From positions 50,344,001 through 50,408,000 of the forward strand of contig NC_043005.1 in assembly GCF_006345805.1 (NCBI RefSeq): a stretch of 64,000 bases of DNA, read 5' to 3'. The translations under genes were made by a program, and so were the position numbers. The notes beneath the pieces were generated by a model, which searched no databases, was not told where the DNA came from, and saw nothing but the letters and a program-made list of their open reading frames with translations. Position 1 is the first letter of the stretch. Each line of letters starts with the position of its first letter. This DNA comes from Octopus sinensis (lineage: Eukaryota). Positions 4,169 to 52,539 of this stretch are shown piece by piece.

Positions 4169-4870
4169 AATATTCTTTTCTACCCTAGGCACAAGGACCT
4201 CGAAAGGATGAAAGGCAAAGTCGACCTCAGCGGAATTTGAACTCAGAAAGTAAAGGCAGACGAAATACCTATTTCTTTACTACCCACAAGGGGCTAAACA
4301 CGGAGAGGACAAACAAGGAGAGAACAAACGAACTAAGTCGATTTTATCGACCCCAGTGTGTAACTGGTACTTATTTAATCGACTCCGAAAGGATGAAAGG
4401 CAAAGTCGACTCGGCGGAATTTGAACTCAGAACGTAACGGCAGACGAAATACCTATTTCTTTATTACCCACAAGGGGCTAAACACAGAGGGGACAAACAA
4501 GGACAGACATAGGTATTAAGTCGATTATATCGACCCCAGTGCGTAACTGGTACTTAATTTATCGACCCCGAAAAGATGAAAGGCAAAGTCGACCTCGGCG
4601 GAATTTGAAATCACAACGTAACACAGACGAAATACCTATTTCTTTATTACCCACAAGGGGCTAAACACAGAGAGGACAAACAAGGAGAGGACAAACGGAT
4701 TAAGTCGATTTTATCGACCCCAGTGTGTAACTGGTACTTATTTAATCGACTCCGAAAGGATGAAAGGCAAAGTCGACCTCAGCGGAATTTGAACTCAGAA
4801 CGTAACGGCAGACGAAATACCGCTAAGCATTTCGCCCGGCGTGCTAACGTTTCTGCCAGCTCGCCACCTT
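4169..4870 (-). mobile_element. SINE-A stack: one head + three tail-1 units + one deleted tail-2 unit
   Basis: Junction GAAATACCTATTTC at ~4262, 4446, 4629; head junction GAAATACCGCT at ~4814; period 183-185 bp. Confidence 0.92.
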
Positions 4871-29394: not shown

Positions 29395-30447
29395 GAGGGA
29401 GAGATAGATACGATTTAACGTACACAGTATAAAGATAAGAGCTACGAATAGTTTCTTACTGTTAAGACACGTAGCTAGGTGGGATTATTCTTTTATAACG
29501 TGCCTTATGTCTCTACGCAATTTTCAGGCTTTGAACATATACGTGAGAAACTACGAGGAAAAGCAAGAAAAAGCGAGAAGGTTGATGCAAAAAGTGGAAG
29601 GGTGAATAAAAACGGAAAAAGAAAAGTAAGGCAATTAAAGTTACGTCTCTTTCGACCGTAGAAGCCAACGTTTTGGATTTGTATCTAAGACTACAGCCAC
29701 TTATGTATAAAATGCGCTCTTTTTATATACAAGACGGTTGATTTAACATAGAACTCACTGTGAAAATCCAATGTGATTTAAGATAGATTTAGTAGCCATT
29801 TCTAACATGTCAAATGATCAAAGGACTCGTTGTTGCGAGTTGTTAAGAATTATTTATGGAAGTGGCTAAGGGGACAACACAATTTTGTCCGAGAATGGAC
29901 ACGATCCGTCCGTCAACCACTGAGTTCGCTGAACAACAGCACATTATCGCTTTGCTTGTCCACATTCTCAAATGCGAATATTGATCGCTAACAGTGGTAC
30001 AAGATTACACATTTGACAAGGGAGCGTGGGCGAGTGGAGAGGGGATTATAATTTATTAAATGAACTCCAGTACTTGACAGATATTTTATTTTATCGACTT
30101 TGGACGGATGAAAGAGCAAAGTTGATCTCGGCAGAATTTGAACACAGAACGCCAAGGGCCATAACTTAAGTTAAATTCTCAACGGATATTGACCTCACTT
30201 ATTATCTGCCACATGAGATAATTGTCAAGGTCAATTAGTTAGTTGAGGTCAACTAGTTAGTTGTCACAGCCTATGCCACCAATTATCCAGTGTGCTACCA
30301 ATTATCCAATATTTCTAAATCGAGCACCAAACTTTAGGTATGAAATTATTGAAACAATTAAGTTCGTGCCGTATGAGAGAAATTAAGGTGAATTCTACAT
30401 TCTAAGATATATATATATATATCTTAGAATGTAGAATTGACCTTAAT

Positions 30448-30498
<51 letters not shown>

Positions 30499-37803: not shown

Positions 37804-38747
37804 GGAGGCGCAATGGCCCAGTGGTTAGGGCAGCAGACTCACGGTCGTAGGCGGCGAGCTGGGAGAAACGTTAGCACGCCGGGTGAAATGCTTACCGGTA
37901 TTTCGTCTGCCGCTACGTTCTGAGTTCAAATTCCGCCGAGGTCGACTTTGCCTTTCATCCTTTCGTGGTCGATTAAATAAGTATCAGTTACGCACTGGGC
38001 TCGATATAATCGACTTAATCCTTTTGTCTGTCCTTGTTTGTCCTCTCTGTGTTTAGCCCCTTGTAGGTAGTAAAGAAATAGGTATTTCGGCTACCGCTAT
38101 GTTATGAGTTCAAATTCCGCCGAGGTCGACTTTGCCTCTCATCCTTTCGGGGTCGATAAATTAAGTACCAATTACGCACTGGGGTCGATATAATCGACTT
38201 AATCCGTTTGTCTGTCCTTGTTCGTCCTCTCTGAGTTTAGCCCCGTGTGGGTAGTAAAGAAATAGAAATAGGTATTTCGTCTGTGTATATGATCTGAGTT
38301 CAAATTTCTCCGAGATCGATGAATTATGTAGCAGTTGCGTACTGGGATCAATGTGATCGACTGCCCCCGCAAAAAAAAAAAAAAAATTCGTGTCTTGTGG
38401 CTAGAGTAGAAAAGGATCACAGTTTCGATTAACAGATCGGGCGTTATGAATGTTTATTCAGCGAAAACACCTATAGGTTCACGAGCCTTCGGCAAGGGTT
38501 GGTGGAGAACCCTGCTGTACTCTTTCACCACAACTTTCTCTCAGTCTTTCTTCCTGTTTCTCTTGTACCTGTATTTGAAAGGGCCAGCTTTGTCACACTC
38601 TGTATCACGCTGAATCTCCCCGAGAACTACGTTAAGGATACACATGTCTGTGGAGTGCTCAGTCACTTGCACGTTAATTTCACGAGCAAGCTGTTCCGAT
38701 GATCGTATCAGCTGGGACCCTCGTTGTCATAACCGACGGAGTGCTCC
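37804..38747 (+). mobile_element. SINE-F (tRNA-like head 37804-37849, body 38415-38747) split by a SINE-A stack (37850-38414)
   Basis: Head GGAGGCGCAATGGCCCAGTGGTTAGGGCAGC..GGTCGTAG continues as GATCACAGTTTCGATT (B-box-like) after the stack; stack GGTATT sites at 37897, 38081 and 38271. Confidence 0.8.
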
Positions 38748-40898: not shown

Positions 40899-42159
40899 TC
40901 AGGTCATCCCATAAGTTCTGTCCGATTTTACCTTTTTTTAAATTGAATGAAATTTAATAGTATTTTAGAATGTCTAATACAATTAAAATTTATTTTTATG
41001 TATTTGTGTACATTTAAACTAATTAAATATTATTTTACAGAATAATAGAATTAAAATTTCTTGGATTAAAACCCTTTCTAACATGGAAGTATCCAAAGAG
41101 TATTTGAGGCACATAATGCTTTACGAGTTGAAGAAAGGAAACTCTGCAGCCGAAGCGACTCGAAACATATCCTCAGTTTATGGGAAAGAATACTTTTATG
41201 AAAGAACTTGCAGAAAATGGTTTGCAAAATTCAGAAGTGGAGATTTAAGCCTTGAAGATGAAGATCGAACAGGACGTCCAGTTGAGGTTGATGATAAGCT
41301 CCTTGAGGCATTTTTTGTAGAAATTCCTGCATTATCAGTTCAAGAATTGGCAATAAAGCTTAGCTTAAACCATGCAACTGTTCATCCTAAACTTGAAAAA
41401 TGGATGCCTCAGGAATTGTCCGAAAGCAACCGCAAATCCCTATTTGACATCTGTTCTTCTCTCCATTCTCGCGAACTCATTTTACACGTTTTGGATAGAC
41501 TTGTGACTGGTGACGAAAAATGGATCTTCTATCGAAATGTTAAACGTCGTAAACAGTGGGTTGGTAAAAGGGAGAAAGCTCAACCACAAACGAGAAGGGA
41601 ACTTCATGGGAAAATGGTTCTTCTCTCTATCTGGTGGGATTGCAAAGGAGTAATTCACTTTGAATTGTTACCACCTAATGCAACAATCAATGCTCAAGTC
41701 TACTGTCAGCAATTAGAGCGTTTGAGCCAAACTTTGAAGAAAAAAAGACCCGCTTTAGTGAATCGAAAAGAAGTGATGTTTCATCAGGGCAATGCGCAAC
41801 CCCACACTGCAAAGATCACATCACAGAAGATCGAAGAGCTTGGTTGGGAAAACATTCCTCATCCACCTTATTCTCCCGACCTTGCTCCTTCACACTACCA
41901 TTTGTTTCGTAGTTTACAGAATCATTTGGGGGACATAACTTTCTCAAGCCAGGAGGAAGTCGAGACTGACATTACAGAGCTCTTCGCTTTGAAACTAAAA
42001 GAGTTTTACATTAATTGGATTAAAAAGCTTGTAAATAGATGGAAGGAAGTCATAGATAATCAGGGAAAGTACATTGATGATTAAATATCAATTAAATATA
42101 ACATTTGATCACTTGTTTTATTTATTCAAATTTCGGACAGGATTTACGGGATGAGCTGA
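40899..42159 (+). mobile_element. Mariner element 1, full length (1261 bp)
   Basis: TA TSDs at 40897-98 and 42160-61; TIR TCAGGTCATCCCATAAGTTCTGTCCGA versus right-end TCAGCTCATCCCGTAAATCCTGTCCGA (4/27 mismatches). Confidence 0.95.
41083..42084 (+). CDS. Mariner transposase ORF, 333 aa, open but catalytically mutated
   Basis: N-terminal HTH region ending RTGRP, WMPQEL (WVPHEL), LVTGDEKW, HQGNAQPH (normally HDNARPH), YSPDLAPSHYHLF (normally YSPDLAPSDY). Confidence 0.88.
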   Translation: MEVSKEYLRHIMLYELKKGNSAAEATRNISSVYGKEYFYERTCRKWFAKFRSGDLSLEDEDRTGRPVEVDDKLLEAFFVEIPALSVQELAIKLSLNHATVHPKLEKWMPQELSESNRKSLFDICSSLHSRELILHVLDRLVTGDEKWIFYRNVKRRKQWVGKREKAQPQTRRELHGKMVLLSIWWDCKGVIHFELLPPNATINAQVYCQQLERLSQTLKKKRPALVNRKEVMFHQGNAQPHTAKITSQKIEELGWENIPHPPYSPDLAPSHYHLFRSLQNHLGDITFSSQEEVETDITELFALKLKEFYINWIKKLVNRWKEVIDNQGKYIDD

Positions 42160-47269: not shown

Positions 47270-47315
<46 letters not shown>

Positions 47316-47318
<3 letters not shown>

Positions 47319-47598
47319 CAATATAGGGTGGCAAAAAATTTCGTAGAATTTATTTGCCACCAGCGGCCTAGTGGGAAAAATTAAATAGTCATAGACCATT
47401 TATAAGTTCAACATCACAATCAAGGAATGGCCATAATAGGCCATTCACCCACTAGAAATAACAGCCAAAGCTTCAACCGCAAAATAACATTAATTCCGCA
47501 ACCAGGTTTGCGGAATTAATGTTATTTTGCGGTTGAAGCTTTGGCTGTTATTTCTAGTGGGTGAATGGCCTATTATGGCCATTCCTTGATTGTGATGT

Positions 47599-47601
<3 letters not shown>
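47316..47601 (+). other. Fold-back element copy 1: 92-bp unique module + perfect 94-bp inverted repeat with 6-nt loop
   Basis: 47408-47501 is the exact reverse complement of 47508-47601; (TA)n on both sides; homologous to 50004-50235. Confidence 0.9.
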
Positions 47602-47658
<57 letters not shown>

Positions 47659-47668
47659 GATATAGATA

Positions 47669-48959
47669 CGAGGGGCGTTCAATAAGTAATGCCCCTGACC
47701 CACTTGCAGTTGTTCGATATAGCTGAAATTTTGCATGTGCAATTATTTATATCTCTATAGAGTAAGTGGCAAATTACAGCTCTGAACTAATTGTGGTTTC
47801 CGATTTACAGGTGTTTGAACTGAGTCAAGTGTGAAATGGAGCATGTTGAGTGTCGAGCAGTGATCCGGTTTTTGTATTTGAAAGGACGCACACCACGGGA
47901 GACTTTTGATGAAATGAAAGTAACTTATGGTGATGATGCCCCATCATATGACCTTGTAAAACGATGGCATCGTGAATTCAAACATGGTCGGAACTCTGTG
48001 GAAACAGCTCCCAGATCTGGTCGCCCCCTTCTGCTATTGATGAGGCATCTGTCTGTCAAGTTGAGGCTGCCATTTTGGAAGATCGACGCATAACTATTCG
48101 CCAAATAGCCCATGAGGTCAAGATTAGTACCGGGTCTGTGGAAACTATCATTCATGACCATTTGCATATGCAAAAGGTGTCTGCCAGATGGATTCCCAGG
48201 CTGCTCACACCTTTCCAGAAGCAAGAACGCGTCGATTGCTCGAGGATGAATTTGGAGATGTGCCAAGAAGATGTGTCAAAATTTTTCAAAAGACTGATTG
48301 CATAGGATAAGACCTGGGTCCATCACTATGATCCAGAGACCAAAGCCCAGTCAATGCAGTGGAAGCACCGTGACTCACCTCCTCCAAAGAAGGCAAGAGT
48401 GCAGCCCTCCGCTGGCAAGGTCATGCTTACAGTCTTCTGGGACCAGGACGGAGTAGTGAAGACAGATTTCCTGGCAAAGGGTGCCACAATTACAGGAGTC
48501 TATTATGCTTCACTTTTGAGGAAATTAAGAGAAGCTATCAAAATCAAGAGGCGGGGCAAGATCAGCAAAGACATCCTCCTCCTGCAGGACAACGCTCCGA
48601 TCCACAACTCGCGTGTCGCCAGATCAGAAGCACAGGCGTGCGGCTATGAACTCATCCCCAATCCCCCTACTCTCCTGACCTTGCACCCTCTGATTTTCAC
48701 CTCTTCCCAGCCATGAAGTTGTTTTTGAAAGGAAAGCGTTTCCCAGATGATGCAGCCTTGATTTCTGAAGTGGCGTCGTGGTTGGAGGACCAAGCTGGGG
48801 TCTTCTACAAAAACGGTCTTCAGAGCTGCATCAAACGATGGGTGAAATGCGTAACTCTGGGTGGTTCCTATGTAGAAAAAGACTAATAACTGTTCCAAGT
48901 TTCGTTGCTCTACTGCTATGGGAAGTGGGTCAGGGGCATTACTTATTGAACGCCCCTCG
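47669..48959 (+). mobile_element. Mariner element 2 (irritans/Hsmar2-like), full length (1291 bp)
   Basis: Identical 37-bp TIRs CGAGGGGCGTTCAATAAGTAATGCCCCTGACCCACTT; TA on the left, AA on the right. Confidence 0.95.
47836..48886 (+). pseudogene. Disrupted mariner transposase (two frameshifts, one stop)
   Basis: MEHVECRAVIRFL..PRSGRP / WIPRLL / LIA*DKTW / LLQDNAP / PYSPDLAPSDFHLF..GGSYVEKD*. Confidence 0.92.
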
Positions 48960-48974
48960 AATATGTATATTGAC

Positions 48975-49135
48975 GAGCTTCTTTCAGTTTCTATCAACCA
49001 AATTTACTCAGAATACTTTCGTTGGCCTGAGGCTATAGTAGAAGACACTCGCCCAAGGTGTCACGCAGTCGTACTGAACCCGGAACCATATGGTTGGGAA
49101 GCAAGCCTCTCTCCACACAGCCACACCTGCGCCTA
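48975..49135 (-). mobile_element. SINE-B 5' half
   Basis: GGCTATAGTAGAAGACACTCGCCCAAGGTG..CCACACAGCCACACCTGCGCC. Confidence 0.8.
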
Positions 49136-49529
49136 TACACATACAGATTTGAAGGGCTAGTTTGTTAAAATTGTCAGCTGCTATTAATTAAAGGATCCAA
49201 AATGTAAATATTGCTGTGAATGAATATTTATAAATTTAGTTATATATTGAATGATTAGCGAAGAATAGTAGAATATTTTGGTCGCGATTTTGTCAACCTT
49301 TATATGGAACAAGAATAAATTTGAATATATTTAGTTATAAAATACAGCTGTTTGGAGAAATTCACAGAAAGGGGGTGGGCGTGACTGAGTCTATAAATTA
49401 TAGTGTTCTCTGTCTCTTTAGTTTCTAACATAGTTAATTTTAATATATTGCATGTATATGTATGTATGTATGTATGCATGCATGCATTATATATATATAC
49501 ATATGTATGTATGTATAAATAAATAAATG

Positions 49530-49561
<32 letters not shown>

Positions 49562-49579
49562 TGTATGTATGTATGTATG

Positions 49580-49609
<30 letters not shown>

Positions 49610-49610
<1 letters not shown>

Positions 49611-49987
49611 CCCTATATAAACGGCAGTTTGTCTGTGCGTTTTCTGTGTGTCTGTTTTCTCGTACCCTCACTCTGACCACGGCTTTCAACCGATTCTGAT
49701 GAAACTTGACACACACATAGCCCAATGTCATAATTCAAAACTAACGCAGCGAAAATTTTGAAAAGTTCCCCCAGTTCTGAAAAAAATCGATAAATTCGAC
49801 ATGGGGTCGAGAATCAGAAACCCAAACCACAGACCGTCTAGGAGACGCAACTCCACCTTTTTTAACTCAAAAAAAATTTACCATCATTTTTTTCCCATTT
49901 TTTTGCTATTTTTTGGCTATAACTCTCTAAAAATGCTTTATAGTTATTTCCCTTACAAACCTGAGCAACGCCGGGCGATACCGCTAG
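49610..49987 (+). mobile_element. Non-autonomous Helitron 1
   Basis: A|TC 5' end, subterminal hairpin region CCTGAGCAACGCCGGG, CTAG|T 3' end; inserted in an AT dinucleotide with no TSD. Confidence 0.85.
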
Positions 49988-50003
49988 TATATATATATAT
50001 ATT

Positions 50004-50230
50004 AATCAATTTAGGGTAGCAAAAAATTCAATAGAAATTTATCGCTACCAGCGGTCTAGTGGGAAAGAGAAAATAGTCAAAGACTAAATATATAAAGTTA
50101 AAACAATTTAGGAATGGCCTTAATAGGCCATTCGTCCACTAGAAAGAGCAGCCATAACTCAAACCGGTTTGAGTTATGGCTGCTCTTTCTAGTGGACGAA
50201 TGGCCTATTAAGGCCATTCCTAAATTGTTT

Positions 50231-50235
<5 letters not shown>
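50004..50235 (+). other. Fold-back element copy 2: 92-bp unique module + perfect spacerless 140-bp palindrome
   Basis: 50096-50165 is the exact reverse complement of 50166-50235 (centre AAACCGGTTT); TA-rich on both sides. Confidence 0.9.
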
Positions 50236-50288
<53 letters not shown>

Positions 50289-50354
50289 TAGATATACAGA
50301 TAGGTAGGTAGGTAGGTGGATAGATAGATAGATAGATATGTATACATATGTATA

Positions 50355-52011
50355 TACTACTAGCCATAGATGTGTCGGACGCATACTCAATTGCTGGTCC
50401 TGATGGTTTCCCAGCAATCCTCCTCAAATAGTGTTAGCGTGCCCTGGCAAAACCTCTACAGATTCTCTTCCAGAGTTTTCTTGCAAACGACAGGCTGCGA
50501 AGCAAACTGAAGGAGGGAATAATATGTCCAATCCATAAAGGAGGAAGCAAATCAAATGCCAAAAACTATAGGCTTATTACTCTGACTTCACAAAGTCATG
50601 GAACGGATAATCAGAGGGAAACTGATCGTATTCCTAGAGGGGAAACAACTTGCTGAGTGATACCCAGCATGGCTTACGACCAGATAGGAGCTGCCTGACC
50701 CAGCTCTTACAATATTATAACTGGATGTTGAAGCAGTTACTCAACAACTCAAAAGTGGACGTAATATACCTTGACTTTGCAAAATCTTTCGATGAAGTGG
50801 ATCATGGTATGATATGCCACAAACTGCGTGATCTTGGCATAGCTGGAAAACTTGGAGAGTGGTTACATGACTTTCTGAAAGATAGAAGTCAGGCAGCAGT
50901 GGCTAATGGAGCCTCCTCAAAGAAAAGAAAAATAGTGAGCAGTGTTCCATTGGGCACTGTCTTGGGACCACTGCTTTTCATAGTGGCCCTCTCAGATAAT
51001 CCCTCAGCCGCCTGGATAGCCACCCCTGCTAGCTACGCAGGCGATACGAAAGTCTCGCAGAAAATACAGAACCCCAGCGATGTTGCGCACCTGCAGCAGG
51101 AGTTGGACTCAGTTTACAGATGGGCTGAGGATAATAATAAGCAGTTTAATGCTGAAAAATTCCAAGCCCTGCGCTACCAGCGTCCAAAACTGAATATAAA
51201 ACTTACAGGGTACACTGTTCCACAGGAGATTACAATCCCAGAGCCTAAATCAGTGAGGGACCTGGTTATCGATATGAGTGATGATACGTCTTTCCAAGTG
51301 CACATTACCAGGATGGCTACAAAGTGCCGTCGACTGGCTGGAGGGATCCTGAGAACGTTCAGAACCAGAGAGAAGGAAACTATGATGGTCCTCTGGAGGA
51401 CATTCGTACTCAGCCACCTGGACTATTGCTCCCAGCTATGGTCACCCAACAGTGTAAATTTAACGGCGGATCTTCAAGCAATCCAGCGAAGCTTCACAAA
51501 GAAGCTTGTCTCGTTGCAACAGCTCAGCTACTGGGAAAGGCTGAAACAGCTAAGACTCTACTCCCTGGAGCGAAGGCGGGGGTGGTATGCAGTAATATTC
51601 ATCTGGAGGATTCTGGAAGGAATTGTGCCAAATTTTGGCATTGAGAGCTACACCAATGCCAGAACGAGTCGACACTGCACAGTTCCAAAGATCCAATCAA
51701 TGCCATCGCGTTTCAGGACCAGTTACTGCAACAGCCTGGGTTACTGGGGCCCACAGCTTTTTAATATTCTCCCAAAGAGCCTGAGAGACCTACAATAAGT
51801 GGATGTAGGTGTTTTCAAATCGAAACTGGACCTCATCCTGTCGAGAGTTCCAGATGAACTCACCTCGCGGGAAGAAGTGCAAATGAGGGTAGCGACACCA
51901 AACTCCCTTATTCACCAAATGTCACATATTAGATAAGGCTCTCAATAATAACAGTGAAGCAAAACGACGATGCCCCAGCATAGTCGCAGCTCTGAGCTGA
52001 AACTACAAAAA
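50355..52011 (+). mobile_element. 5'-truncated CR1/L2-clade LINE with RT domain, inactive
   Basis: AGPDGFPAILL..PIHKGG..KNYR; ORF 50650-51798: QHGLRPDRSCLTQL, YLDFAKSFDEVDH, SSVPLGTVLGPLLF, SYAGDTK (YADD mutated), LSHLDYCS..WSP; stops and a frameshift; structured 3' tail 51966-52011. Confidence 0.92.
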
Positions 52012-52023
52012 TTATATATATCA

Positions 52024-52539
52024 CTAGCAGTATCGCCCGGCGTTGCTCGGGTTTGTAAGGGAAATAACTATATAAGCATTTTTAGAGAGTTACTTCCTTT
52101 ATAGATGCCAATTCGGGCTTTCTTAGCCATTTCTGTTTTGGTGTCTTCAAGCCATGAAGTCGTTGTTCTAAAAGAACGCTGGTCTCCTTGACAACGCATT
52201 ACGACGTTGATTTCCTTAAACTCCCTTCCCCACAGCTTCACGAGGGAGGAAGAAGGGGGAGAAGCAAACACAGGTGCAGGTGTTTGAGCGTGGACGCCAA
52301 CTCCGCCGCCATCGACACACGAAAAATTATGCATTAAAATGGAATAAAAAATGATGTTAAATTATTTTTAAAATCGTAGACTCATCGTAGACGCGCGCTA
52401 ATAGTCAGACGGGCTCGATATTAATCACGACTATAAGATACCCGAATTTGGTTAAACTGCACCGCAAAATGTGGGAGGAGTTAGGAATCTAAATCGTAGG
52501 AGACAGACACTCACACAACTACAGTTTTATATATATAGA
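52024..52539 (-). mobile_element. Non-autonomous Helitron 2
   Basis: Minus strand A|TCTATATATATAAAACTG..CCCGAGCAACGCCGGGCGATACTGCTAG|T. Confidence 0.87.

What the first reader, a model, noticed from the sequence alone, without database searches (positions are those of the whole stretch)
47316..50235. Two diverged (TA)n-flanked elements, each terminating in its own perfect fold-back palindrome
Seen: 47316-47601 and 50004-50235 are homologous (roughly a quarter of positions differ by eye), start at the same AATCAAT boundary and sit in TA runs. Each ends in an inverted duplication with zero mismatches (94-bp arms + 6-nt loop; 70-bp arms, no spacer). The outer arm boundaries fall within 3 nt of the same homologous AGTT(C/A)AAC site, while the centres are unrelated. 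Inference: perfect arms in otherwise diverged copies mean the hairpin is built anew at each insertion (or homogenised by conversion), with a fixed boundary and variable turn point. Established: Penelope-like elements make tail-to-tail inverted pLTRs with variable tails, and some favour microsatellites, but I found no ORF or hammerhead core here. Candidate undescribed non-autonomous hairpin-generating element.
Basis: partly seen in the sequence, partly recalled or inferred. Interest (0 to 1): 0.82.

Follow-up and report, generated by a model that had tools for sequence, protein, structure and literature searches.

The report
Hairpin-ended repeat copies in TA microsatellites
Two diverged copies of a small non-coding mobile element sit inside TA microsatellites of what looks like an octopod genome, each ending in its own flawless fold-back duplication; this looks like the known insertion scar of Penelope-like retroelements rather than a new kind of element, but the link could not be proven without the host genome.

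Summary
Copy 1 (47316-47601) and copy 2 (50004-50235) are 76-79% identical. Both start at AATCAAT and both lie inside (TA)n. Each ends in a perfect palindrome: 94-nt arms in copy 1, 70-nt arms in copy 2. They are the only long, complex perfect palindromes in the 64 kb. Their flanks share no unique homology, so they are independent insertions.

One correction: the centres are not unrelated. Both turn after AACC (…CAACC-A-GGTTTG… and …AAACC|GGTTT…).

I found no ORF, hammerhead core, Rfam family, terminal inverted repeats or Helitron ends.

The anatomy matches published Penelope-like element (PLE) behaviour: a preference for (TA)n or AT-rich targets, an inverted 5'-truncated copy joined head-to-head, and a one-sided "tail". 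The tail is explained by priming cDNA on both target strands from two alternative RT start sites. Here each fixed outer boundary lies beside a UA-rich patch and just 3' of a conserved GC stem-loop.

My best reading is a non-autonomous or extremely truncated PLE-type retroelement whose arms are rebuilt at each insertion by template jump or snap-back. PLE membership is unproven. No further copies or autonomous partner could be reached, because no cephalopod genome was searchable. Moderate-to-low interest.

The parts
47274..47316 (.). (TA)21 run abutting the left end of copy 1. It is the target microsatellite, possibly partly a UA tail brought by the element.
   Evidence: TRF, 100% pure; sequence
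47316..47407 (-). Copy 1, unique part A (92 nt). It is present on one arm only and is read here as the 'tail'. The inferred RNA sense is the minus strand, so 47316 is the terminal RT start site.
   Evidence: 79% identical to 50004-50095. It has no inverted partner. The orientation is inferred.
47327..47361 (-). Conserved stem-loop in A (GGTGGCAAA...TTTGCCACC), 11 nt from the left boundary.
   Evidence: Folds. One compensatory G-C to A-U change between the copies. One further pair changes A-U to G.U, which is a valid pair only on the minus strand.
47398..47405 (.). TA-rich patch (ATTTATAA) at the A/B junction. It is read as the internal priming or annealing site that fixes the outer end of the inverted arm.
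   Evidence: Sequence. The function is inferred.
47408..47501 (-). Copy 1, arm B (94 nt). It contains the conserved small hairpin GAATGGCC-N6-GGCCATTC at 47425-47446.
47502..47507 (.). Copy 1 centre, CCAGGT. It can be read as CC-A-GG plus one extra T, so the palindrome reaches the apex apart from 2 nt.
47508..47601 (+). Copy 1, inverted arm B', the perfect reverse complement of B. It ends ...GTGATGTTGA at the TA run.
47601..47668 (.). (TA)n run on the right of copy 1
   Evidence: TRF, 34.5 copies, 91% matches
49988..50003 (.). Short (TA)n run on the left of copy 2. An unrelated 377-bp element at 49611-49987 separates it from a further TA run.
50004..50095 (-). Copy 2, unique part A (tail). It holds the stem-loop at 50015-50049 and the TA-rich patch at 50085-50095.
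50096..50165 (-). Copy 2, arm B (70 nt). It contains the small hairpin at 50112-50133.
50166..50235 (+). Copy 2, inverted arm B'. It is perfect, with no spacer, and the centre reads AAACC|GGTTT.
50235..50296 (.). (TA)n run on the right of copy 2
   Evidence: TRF, 32 copies, 90% matches

Best explanation
These are two independent insertions of a short non-coding retroelement. It is either non-autonomous or an extremely 5'-truncated copy. It integrated by target-primed reverse transcription (TPRT) into (TA)n microsatellites, most likely through the machinery of a Penelope-like element (PLE).

Inferred mechanism:
1. The element RNA corresponds to the minus strand of A+B, that is 5'-GGUU...B'...UA-patch...A'-3'.
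2. The endonuclease cuts both strands of the AT-rich target, and both 3'-OH ends prime cDNA.
3. One strand starts at the terminal site, just past the stem-loop GGUGGC/GCCACC followed by CCUAUAUUGAUU. This gives the arm that carries the 92-nt tail A.
4. The other strand starts at an internal site next to a UA-rich patch, just past the stem-loop GAAUGGCC/GGCCAUUC followed by CCU(A/U)NAUUG. This gives the arm without the tail.
5. The inner ends coincide for one of two reasons. Either both cDNAs run to the same RNA 5' end, or one cDNA jumps onto or snaps back along the other. Either way the arms are copied from one template at the moment of insertion and are therefore identical.

Shown: the anatomy, the TA-run location, the independence of the two loci, and the absence of coding capacity, ribozyme, TIR and TSD.

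Inferred: the RNA intermediate, the strand polarity, the two start sites, the jump or snap-back, and the PLE partner.
For: - The arms are perfect (0/94 and 0/70 mismatches), while the copies differ at 21-24% of positions. The arms are therefore regenerated far more recently than the lineages split.
- The flanks share no unique homology, so these are separate insertions.
- Both copies lie in (TA)n, which covers only 3.3% of the window.
- Both outer boundaries are fixed in the two copies, and the extra 92 nt is present on one side only.
- Each boundary lies next to TA-rich sequence and 11-18 nt from a conserved GC stem-loop followed by CAAT(W)(W)AGG on the plus strand. The A stem carries a compensatory change, plus a G.U pair valid only on the minus strand.
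- Both centres read AACC(A)GGTT, so the inferred RNA would start GGUU in both copies. The odd apex A in copy 1 fits a non-templated nucleotide at a template jump.
- Naiad PLEs prefer (TA)n and lack hammerheads. PLE insertions in general are heavily 5'-truncated, often carry an adjacent inverted 5'-truncated copy, and have a tail at one end only (PMC8557442).
- A purified Poseidon PLE protein cleaves and extends both target strands, prefers AT-rich DNA, and starts RT at two internal sites. The tail is the sequence between those sites (PMC11167929).
- cDNA snap-back at 5' junctions is documented for R2 TPRT in human cells (PMC11371274 and PMC11331408).
- PLEs were recently active in Octopus vulgaris (PMC13282606). 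The window looks octopod: the RT homologues that carry an organism name and score highest are from Argonauta and Octopus.
Against: - There are only two copies, and no RT/GIY-YIG partner or longer copy was found. PLE membership therefore rests on architecture alone.
- The tail is 92 nt, against the published 30-40 bp.
- There is no pLTR or partial tandem.
- In the Poseidon assay RT starts at sites that are not homologous to the target, whereas I invoke UA/TA pairing.
- Cephalopod Naiads are reported as ancient remnants, which sits badly with flawless arms unless another PLE clade is responsible.
- The similarity between the two proposed start modules is not significant on its own (61/1000 shuffles).
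- Perfectly coincident truncation of both arms is not a stated feature of PLE insertions.
Confidence: 0.5

Rival explanations
1. A SINE-like element mobilised by a non-LTR (LINE) retrotransposon. First-strand cDNA snaps back on itself at the RNA 5' end. The snap-back strand then joins the upstream (TA)n target by microhomology at the first TA-rich patch it copies. Only one priming event is needed and no PLE is involved.
For: - Snap-back 5' junctions occur in R2 TPRT.
- A TA-rich patch lies exactly at the fixed arm boundary in both copies.
- There is a stem-loop near the inferred RNA 3' end, as in stringent LINE/SINE pairs. That comparison rests on my own knowledge.
- LINE RTs are abundant in the window.
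Against: - Snap-back is a minority outcome for R2, yet both copies here show it.
- The elements share no 3'-end similarity with the LINEs in the window.
- There is no tRNA-like head.
- (TA)n targeting and inverted copies are hallmarks of PLEs rather than LINEs.
Confidence: 0.17
2. A DNA-level element whose palindrome is an inherent part of it. It could be a fold-back or MADE1-like palindromic MITE, or a single-strand/HUH-type (Helitron-like) element. The two copies would be young insertions from two subfamilies, and hairpin-dependent replication or repair would re-symmetrise the arms in each cycle.
For: - TA and A^T are the targets of Tc1/mariner and Helitrons respectively, and TA-microsatellite-targeting DNA transposons exist (MuTAnT).
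- The plus strand begins A|TC, as Helitrons do.
- Mariners are present and apparently intact in the window.
Against: - The two ends of the full unit share no terminal inverted repeat; at most 5 nt match, and in copy 1 only.
- The 92-nt A lies outside the palindrome.
- The 3' ends are GTTGA and TTAAC, not CTRR.
- The hairpin is 70-94 bp and reaches the terminus, instead of being a short subterminal hairpin.
- The ends are unrelated to the neighbouring mariner TIR (I24).
- The window holds no Rep/helicase or matching transposase.
Confidence: 0.15
3. Old insertions whose closely spaced arms are kept identical by intrastrand gene conversion. The hairpin or cruciform extrudes and mismatch repair corrects it. 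The perfection of the arms would then say nothing about how the element inserts.
For: Arm-to-arm conversion is established for large palindromes (my own knowledge). The spacers of 0-6 nt favour hairpin extrusion. The copies are 21-24% diverged, which could mean they are old.
Against: - This does not explain why both copies have the same outer boundary, a one-sided tail, and a centre at AACC/GGTT.
- The divergence may reflect subfamily differences rather than age.
- Long spacer-less palindromes are usually unstable rather than conserved (my own knowledge).
- No other palindromes in the window are comparably maintained.
Confidence: 0.1
4. Assembly or sequencing artefact, such as fold-back chimeric reads.
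For: Perfect spacer-less palindromes are a known artefact class. No reads were available to check.
Against: - Two separate palindromes occur at homologous positions in two diverged copies.
- Each is embedded in normal sequence on both sides.
- The arms are short (70-94 nt) with element-specific boundaries.
- The window contains no other such palindromes.
Confidence: 0.03

Closest known systems
Penelope-like elements, especially the Naiad and Neptune clades that target (TA)n, and the insertion architecture shown biochemically for Poseidon_Ac
   Same: - (TA)n or AT-rich target.
- Heavy 5' truncation.
- An inverted 5'-truncated copy joined at the truncated ends.
- An extension ('tail') at one end only, bounded by two alternative RT start sites.
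- TSDs that cannot be discerned inside microsatellites.
- No hammerhead, as in Naiads.
(PMC8557442; PMC11167929)
   Different: - No RT/GIY-YIG ORF and no demonstrated similarity to a PLE 3' end.
- No pLTR or partial tandem.
- The tail is 92 nt rather than 30-40 bp.
- The whole insertion is only 232-286 bp.
- The two arms are truncated at exactly the same point, which gives a perfect palindrome.
Non-autonomous PLE derivatives: MRC1-type non-autonomous Chlamys elements and animal non-LTR retrozymes
   Same: Short, non-coding, and presumably mobilised in trans by a PLE (PMC8557442; bioRxiv 10.64898/2026.07.22.740005).
   Different: Those elements form head-to-tail tandems or pLTRs, and retrozymes carry hammerhead ribozymes. 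Here the duplication is inverted rather than tandem, and no hammerhead core is present.
cDNA snap-back 5' junctions in R2 target-primed reverse transcription, and L1 twin priming
   Same: An inverted copy of the element's own sequence is made during integration, at the 5' junction (PMC11371274; PMC11331408).
   Different: These are minority outcomes for R2. L1 twin priming gives an inversion of a different segment rather than a perfect palindrome (my own knowledge). Neither involves a (TA)n target.
DNA transposons that target TA microsatellites (MuTAnT in Medicago; Micron in rice, cited from my own knowledge)
   Same: Insertion inside (TA)n arrays (PMC4486113).
   Different: Those elements have TIRs or subterminal inverted repeats and TSDs, and they lack a copy-specific perfect fold-back. 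Here no TIRs were found.
Helitrons
   Same: An A^T-compatible site, a 5' TC, and a 3' hairpin.
   Different: There is no CTRR end. The hairpin is 70-94 bp and terminal, rather than about 8-10 bp and subterminal.

Membership tests
Penelope-like element (non-autonomous or truncated copy) | PLE-clade RT plus GIY-YIG endonuclease ORF in the element, or 3'-end sequence shared with an autonomous partner | not testable with these tools
   The elements have no ORF longer than 43 aa. The window contains no GIY-YIG motif; its only RT ORFs are LINE-type. No host genome was searchable: metagenome, viral and peptide searches all came back empty.
Penelope-like element (non-autonomous or truncated copy) | Inverted 5'-truncated copy adjoining the direct copy, with the element's fixed ends on the outside | tested here: met
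   Arms 47408-47501 / 47508-47601 and 50096-50165 / 50166-50235. The outer boundaries are homologous in both copies.
Penelope-like element (non-autonomous or truncated copy) | 'Tail' extension present at one end only (published as 30-40 bp, lying between two RT start sites) | tested here: inconclusive
   A one-sided extension is present in both copies, but it is 92 nt long. The start sites are inferred, not measured.
Penelope-like element (non-autonomous or truncated copy) | Pseudo-LTR or partial tandem arrangement | tested here: not met
   Neither copy has a direct tandem duplicate of the unit.
Penelope-like element (non-autonomous or truncated copy) | Hammerhead ribozyme in the pLTR (canonical clades only; absent from Naiad and Chlamys) | tested here: not met
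   Rfam gave no hammerhead hit at the gathering threshold or at E<=10. Neither copy contains a CTGANGA core.
Penelope-like element (non-autonomous or truncated copy) | Insertion bias for AT-rich or (TA)n DNA | tested here: met
   Both copies are bracketed by (TA)n, which covers 3.3% of the window. The sample is only two copies.
TIR MITE (Tc1/mariner, piggyBac or hAT type) | Terminal inverted repeats at both ends of the unit, plus a target-site duplication | tested here: not met
   The left end is AATCAAT(A/T)TAGGG. The reverse complement of the right end is TCAACATCAC or AGTTAAAACA. At most 5 terminal nt match, and in copy 1 only. A TSD cannot be scored inside (TA)n.
Fold-back element | The whole element consists of long inverted arms, usually built from subrepeats, that reach both termini | tested here: not met
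   The 92-nt part A lies outside the palindrome, and the arms contain no subrepeats.
Helitron | 5'-TC, 3'-CTRR, a short hairpin about 10 nt before the 3' end, and insertion between A and T | tested here: not met
   A 5' TC is present and the site is A^T-compatible, but that is trivially true in (TA)n. The 3' ends are GTTGA and TTAAC. The hairpin is 70-94 bp and terminal.
Retrozyme | Tandem units that carry a hammerhead ribozyme | tested here: not met
tRNA-derived SINE | tRNA-like head with A and B boxes, and a tail shared with a LINE | tested here: not met
   ARAGORN found no tRNA-like structure. The elements have no similarity to the LINE 3' regions in the window. One A-box-like string (CGGCCTAGTGG) was seen by eye only.

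The most novel reading that the evidence does not exclude
A family of tiny non-coding elements that obligatorily builds a perfect, copy-specific hairpin at every insertion. The mechanism would not yet be described, for example priming at two modular 'stem-loop + CCUAAAUUG + UA patch' start sites with an end-to-end jump at a defined GGUU RNA 5' end. The element would populate (TA)n microsatellites of a cephalopod genome and might seed long hairpin-RNA loci or fragile palindromes.
Probability: 0.12. Interest if true: 0.7.

Novelty: new member of a known kind. Interest (0 to 1): 0.35.

Why it matters
If the PLE reading is right, these two copies are unusually clean natural records of the least understood step of PLE integration. 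They show both outer RT start sites, the one-sided tail, and the junction between the two convergent cDNAs, all within fewer than 300 bp.

A genome-wide series of such mini-insertions would give a map of start-site usage and jump points. That map could test the double-strand priming model proposed from in vitro work.

The insertions also add perfect 140-190-bp palindromes next to long (TA)n tracts. Such structures are potentially fragile or may generate hairpin RNA, and standard TE pipelines are likely to misclassify them as MITEs or miRNA-like hairpins. The Rfam sub-threshold miRNA hits illustrate this.

If the reading is wrong and the element moves as DNA, the copy-specific perfect arms would need a new explanation.

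Tried and rejected
- **More copies in the window.** blastn at word size 7 and nhmmer --max found only the two. Weak hits at about 10.3, 17.6 and 27.6 kb were unrelated to each other and to the element.
- **Copies elsewhere.** Two motif scans of the metagenome contigs gave 0 hits and then 1 chance hit in a GC-rich prokaryotic contig. Two viral scans gave 0 hits.
- **Spurious-ORF search.** I searched the 5.8-billion-protein set with the element's own short ORFs, hoping for spurious gene calls on other copies. No candidates came back.
- **Sampling the host genome through window proteins.**
  - An exact look-up of the intact mariner transposase found nothing on record.
  - Its homologues sit on Logan contigs of about 1.3 kb.
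  - The RT homologues led to a 21-kb piece of Argonauta hians and a 2-kb ENA contig, neither holding a copy.
- **Supplementary TE libraries.** None is held as text for the two key papers.
- **Segmental duplication of the locus.** Rejected, because the flanks share no unique homology.
- **A and B as diverged tandem units.** Not significant by shuffling.
- **Known RNA families.** Only generic sub-threshold miRNA-hairpin matches appeared, which any long perfect hairpin would give.
- **piggyBac-like reading.** Copy 2 has TTAA near both arm ends and a CCACTAGAAAG string. I rejected this because copy 1 has TTCA at that position, the strings are internal, and there is no CCC/GGG terminus.
Full report
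**1. The observation**

Copy 1 spans 47316-47601 and copy 2 spans 50004-50235.

- Copy 1 has a unique 92-nt part A (47316-47407). It is followed by arms 47408-47501 and 47508-47601, each 94 nt and 100% complementary, around a 6-nt centre.
- Copy 2 has A at 50004-50095 and arms 50096-50165 and 50166-50235, each 70 nt, perfect and without a spacer. The tool's 81-nt, 98% version simply runs on into the self-complementary TA flank.
- Predicted folding energies lie 25 and 20 standard deviations below shuffled controls.
- The copies are 79% identical in A and 76% identical in B (alignment).
- Both begin AATCAAT directly after a TA run. The outer ends of the arms fall 3 nt apart at the homologous AGTT(C/A)AAC site.

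A scan of all centres with spacers of 0-40 nt found no other long perfect palindrome of complex sequence in the 64 kb. The next best has 24-nt arms. Pure (TA)>=6 runs cover 3.3% of the window, so two elements each bracketed by such runs is not a chance pattern, although the sample is only two.

**2. A correction to the observation**

The centres are not unrelated. Copy 1 reads ...CGCAACC-A-GGTT(T)GCG... and copy 2 reads ...CAAACC|GGTTTG.... Both turn immediately after AACC. Copy 1 also carries the homologous CAACCG 22 nt upstream, at the position where copy 2 turns.

The 6-nt "loop" of copy 1 is really CC-A-GG plus one extra T. Its palindrome therefore reaches the apex except for an unpaired A and a 1-nt bulge in a T run.

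**3. What it is not**

- *Not coding.* The longest open stretch is 43 codons.
- *Not a known RNA family.*
  - Rfam gave nothing at gathering thresholds in the window.
  - The permissive search gave only sub-threshold miRNA-precursor models, which any long perfect hairpin would match.
  - Neither copy has a hammerhead CUGANGA core.
  - No tRNA-like structure was found.
- *Not a local duplication.* The flanks of the two copies share only microsatellite matches.
- *Not a TIR element.* The two ends of the full unit share at most 5 nt, and only in copy 1.
- *Not a canonical Helitron.* There is no CTRR end, and the hairpin is 70-94 bp and reaches the terminus.
- *Not a fold-back element.* A lies outside the palindrome.
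- *No partner nearby.* The window encodes no PLE-type RT, GIY-YIG, Rep/helicase or matching transposase. The neighbours are a decayed mariner (47669-48961, TIRs I24) and a LINE RT (50638-51795).

**4. Further anatomy**

- *Stem-loop in A.*
  - A holds a conserved stem-loop at 47327-47361 in copy 1 and 50015-50049 in copy 2.
  - It carries one compensatory G-C to A-U change between the copies.
  - One further pair changes A-U to G.U, which is a valid pair only on the minus strand.
- *Hairpin in B.* B holds an invariant small hairpin, GAATGGCC-N6-GGCCATTC.
- *Shared motif at both boundaries.*
  - On the plus strand, each outer boundary is followed within 3-9 nt by CAAT(W)(W)AGG, which runs straight into one of these stems.
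  - In copy 2 the 9-mer CAATTTAGG is identical at both boundaries.
  - On its own this similarity is not significant (61 of 1000 shuffles).
- *TA-rich junction.* The A/B junction is TA-rich in both copies: ATTTATAA at 47398-47405 and TAAATATATAA at 50085-50095.

**5. Relevant literature**

- *Craig et al. 2021 (PMC8557442).*
  - Naiad PLEs preferentially insert into (TA)n and lack canonical hammerheads.
  - PLE insertions generally, Naiads included, are heavily 5'-truncated.
  - They often carry an inverted 5'-truncated copy immediately adjacent.
  - They often show a 30-40-bp tail at one end only.
  - TSDs cannot be discerned in the microsatellite.
- *Frangieh et al. 2024 (PMC11167929).*
  - A purified Poseidon PLE protein cleaves and extends both strands of an AT-rich target.
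  - It initiates reverse transcription at two internal sites.
  - The tail is the sequence between those sites.
- *R2 work in human cells (PMC11371274 and PMC11331408).* This documents cDNA snap-back at 5' junctions.
- *Host context.* Octopus vulgaris has 30 recently active Penelope families (PMC13282606). Among the RT homologues that carry an organism name, those from Argonauta hians and Octopus score highest, so the window is probably octopod.

**6. Best explanation (inference)**

The element moves through RNA whose sense is the minus strand of A+B. A PLE-type protein nicks both strands of a (TA)n tract, and both 3' ends prime cDNA.

- One strand primes at the terminal start site, which gives the arm with the 92-nt tail.
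- The other primes at the internal UA-rich patch, which gives the arm without it.
- The inner ends coincide because both cDNAs reach the same RNA 5' end, or because one cDNA jumps onto or snaps back along the other. The inferred RNA would read GGUU... in both copies.
- The arms are therefore copied from one template at insertion and are identical. The lone apex A in copy 1 fits a non-templated nucleotide.

This accounts for the TA location, the two fixed outer boundaries, the one-sided tail, the perfect arms in otherwise diverged copies, and the absence of TIR, TSD and ORF.

Weak points:
- There are only two copies and no demonstrated partner.
- The tail is about three times the published length.
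- There is no pLTR.
- Priming by UA/TA pairing differs from the non-homologous initiation seen for Poseidon.
- Cephalopod Naiads are reported as old remnants.

I put this model at about 0.5.

**7. Rivals**

- LINE-driven snap-back with a microhomology join at the TA patch: 0.17.
- A DNA-level palindromic element (fold-back, MADE1-like MITE or Helitron-like): 0.15.
- Old insertions homogenised by intrastrand conversion: 0.10.
- Assembly artefact: 0.03.

The evidence for and against each, and what would refute it, is given in the Rival explanations section.

**8. What could not be done**

No eukaryotic genome collection was searchable. Motif scans of metagenome and viral contigs, a peptide search for spurious gene calls on other copies, and sampling through window-encoded proteins all failed to reach further copies.

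**9. Verdict**

The feature is real, clean and non-random. However, the architecture is already described for Penelope-like elements, so this is most likely a new non-autonomous or truncated member of a known kind rather than an undescribed class. Interest is moderate to low (0.35). A roughly 12% chance remains that the mechanism is new.

Noticed in passing
49611-49987 (+) and 52024-52092 (-): A second repeat family associated with TA runs. A 377-bp non-coding element lies between (TA)n runs and ends ...GCGATACCGCTAG next to (TA)n. Its last 69 nt recur inverted, 96% identical, again abutting TATATATA just past the LINE 3' region.
   Followed up: partly
47669-48961: A decayed mariner-like element with 46-nt, 93% terminal inverted repeats (ACGAGGGGCGTTCAATAAGTAATGCCCC...). 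Its transposase frame is broken in several places. It is inserted in the TA/GATA flank just to the right of copy 1.
   Followed up: partly
41083-42084 (+): An apparently intact 333-aa mariner transposase ORF. The closest database relative is 86% identical, on a 1.3-kb Logan contig, and the exact protein is not on record.
   Followed up: partly
50438-51795 (+): A 5'-truncated LINE reverse-transcriptase ORF (RVT_1). Its highest-scoring organism-named relatives are from Argonauta hians (57%) and Octopus (65% over half its length). This is the basis for calling the window octopod.
   Followed up: partly
1210-1594: (TTA)63 is directly followed by (TAA)66. This strand-switched microsatellite is formally a palindrome with arms of about 190 nt.
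   Followed up: no
30375-30455: A near-perfect palindrome with arms of about 37 nt, centred on (TA)8 (GAGAAATTAAGGTGAATTCTACATTCTAAG-(TA)8-CTTAGAATGTAGAATTGACCTTAATTCTC). It is followed by (CT)n and (TA)n. The geometry is the opposite of the finding: here TA is at the centre, not outside.
   Followed up: no
4196-4821 and 37897-38265: A 184-nt SINE-like unit occurs as short tandem arrays (3.4 and 2 copies, about 90% identical) in opposite orientations. Fragments of the same family are scattered through the window.
   Followed up: no
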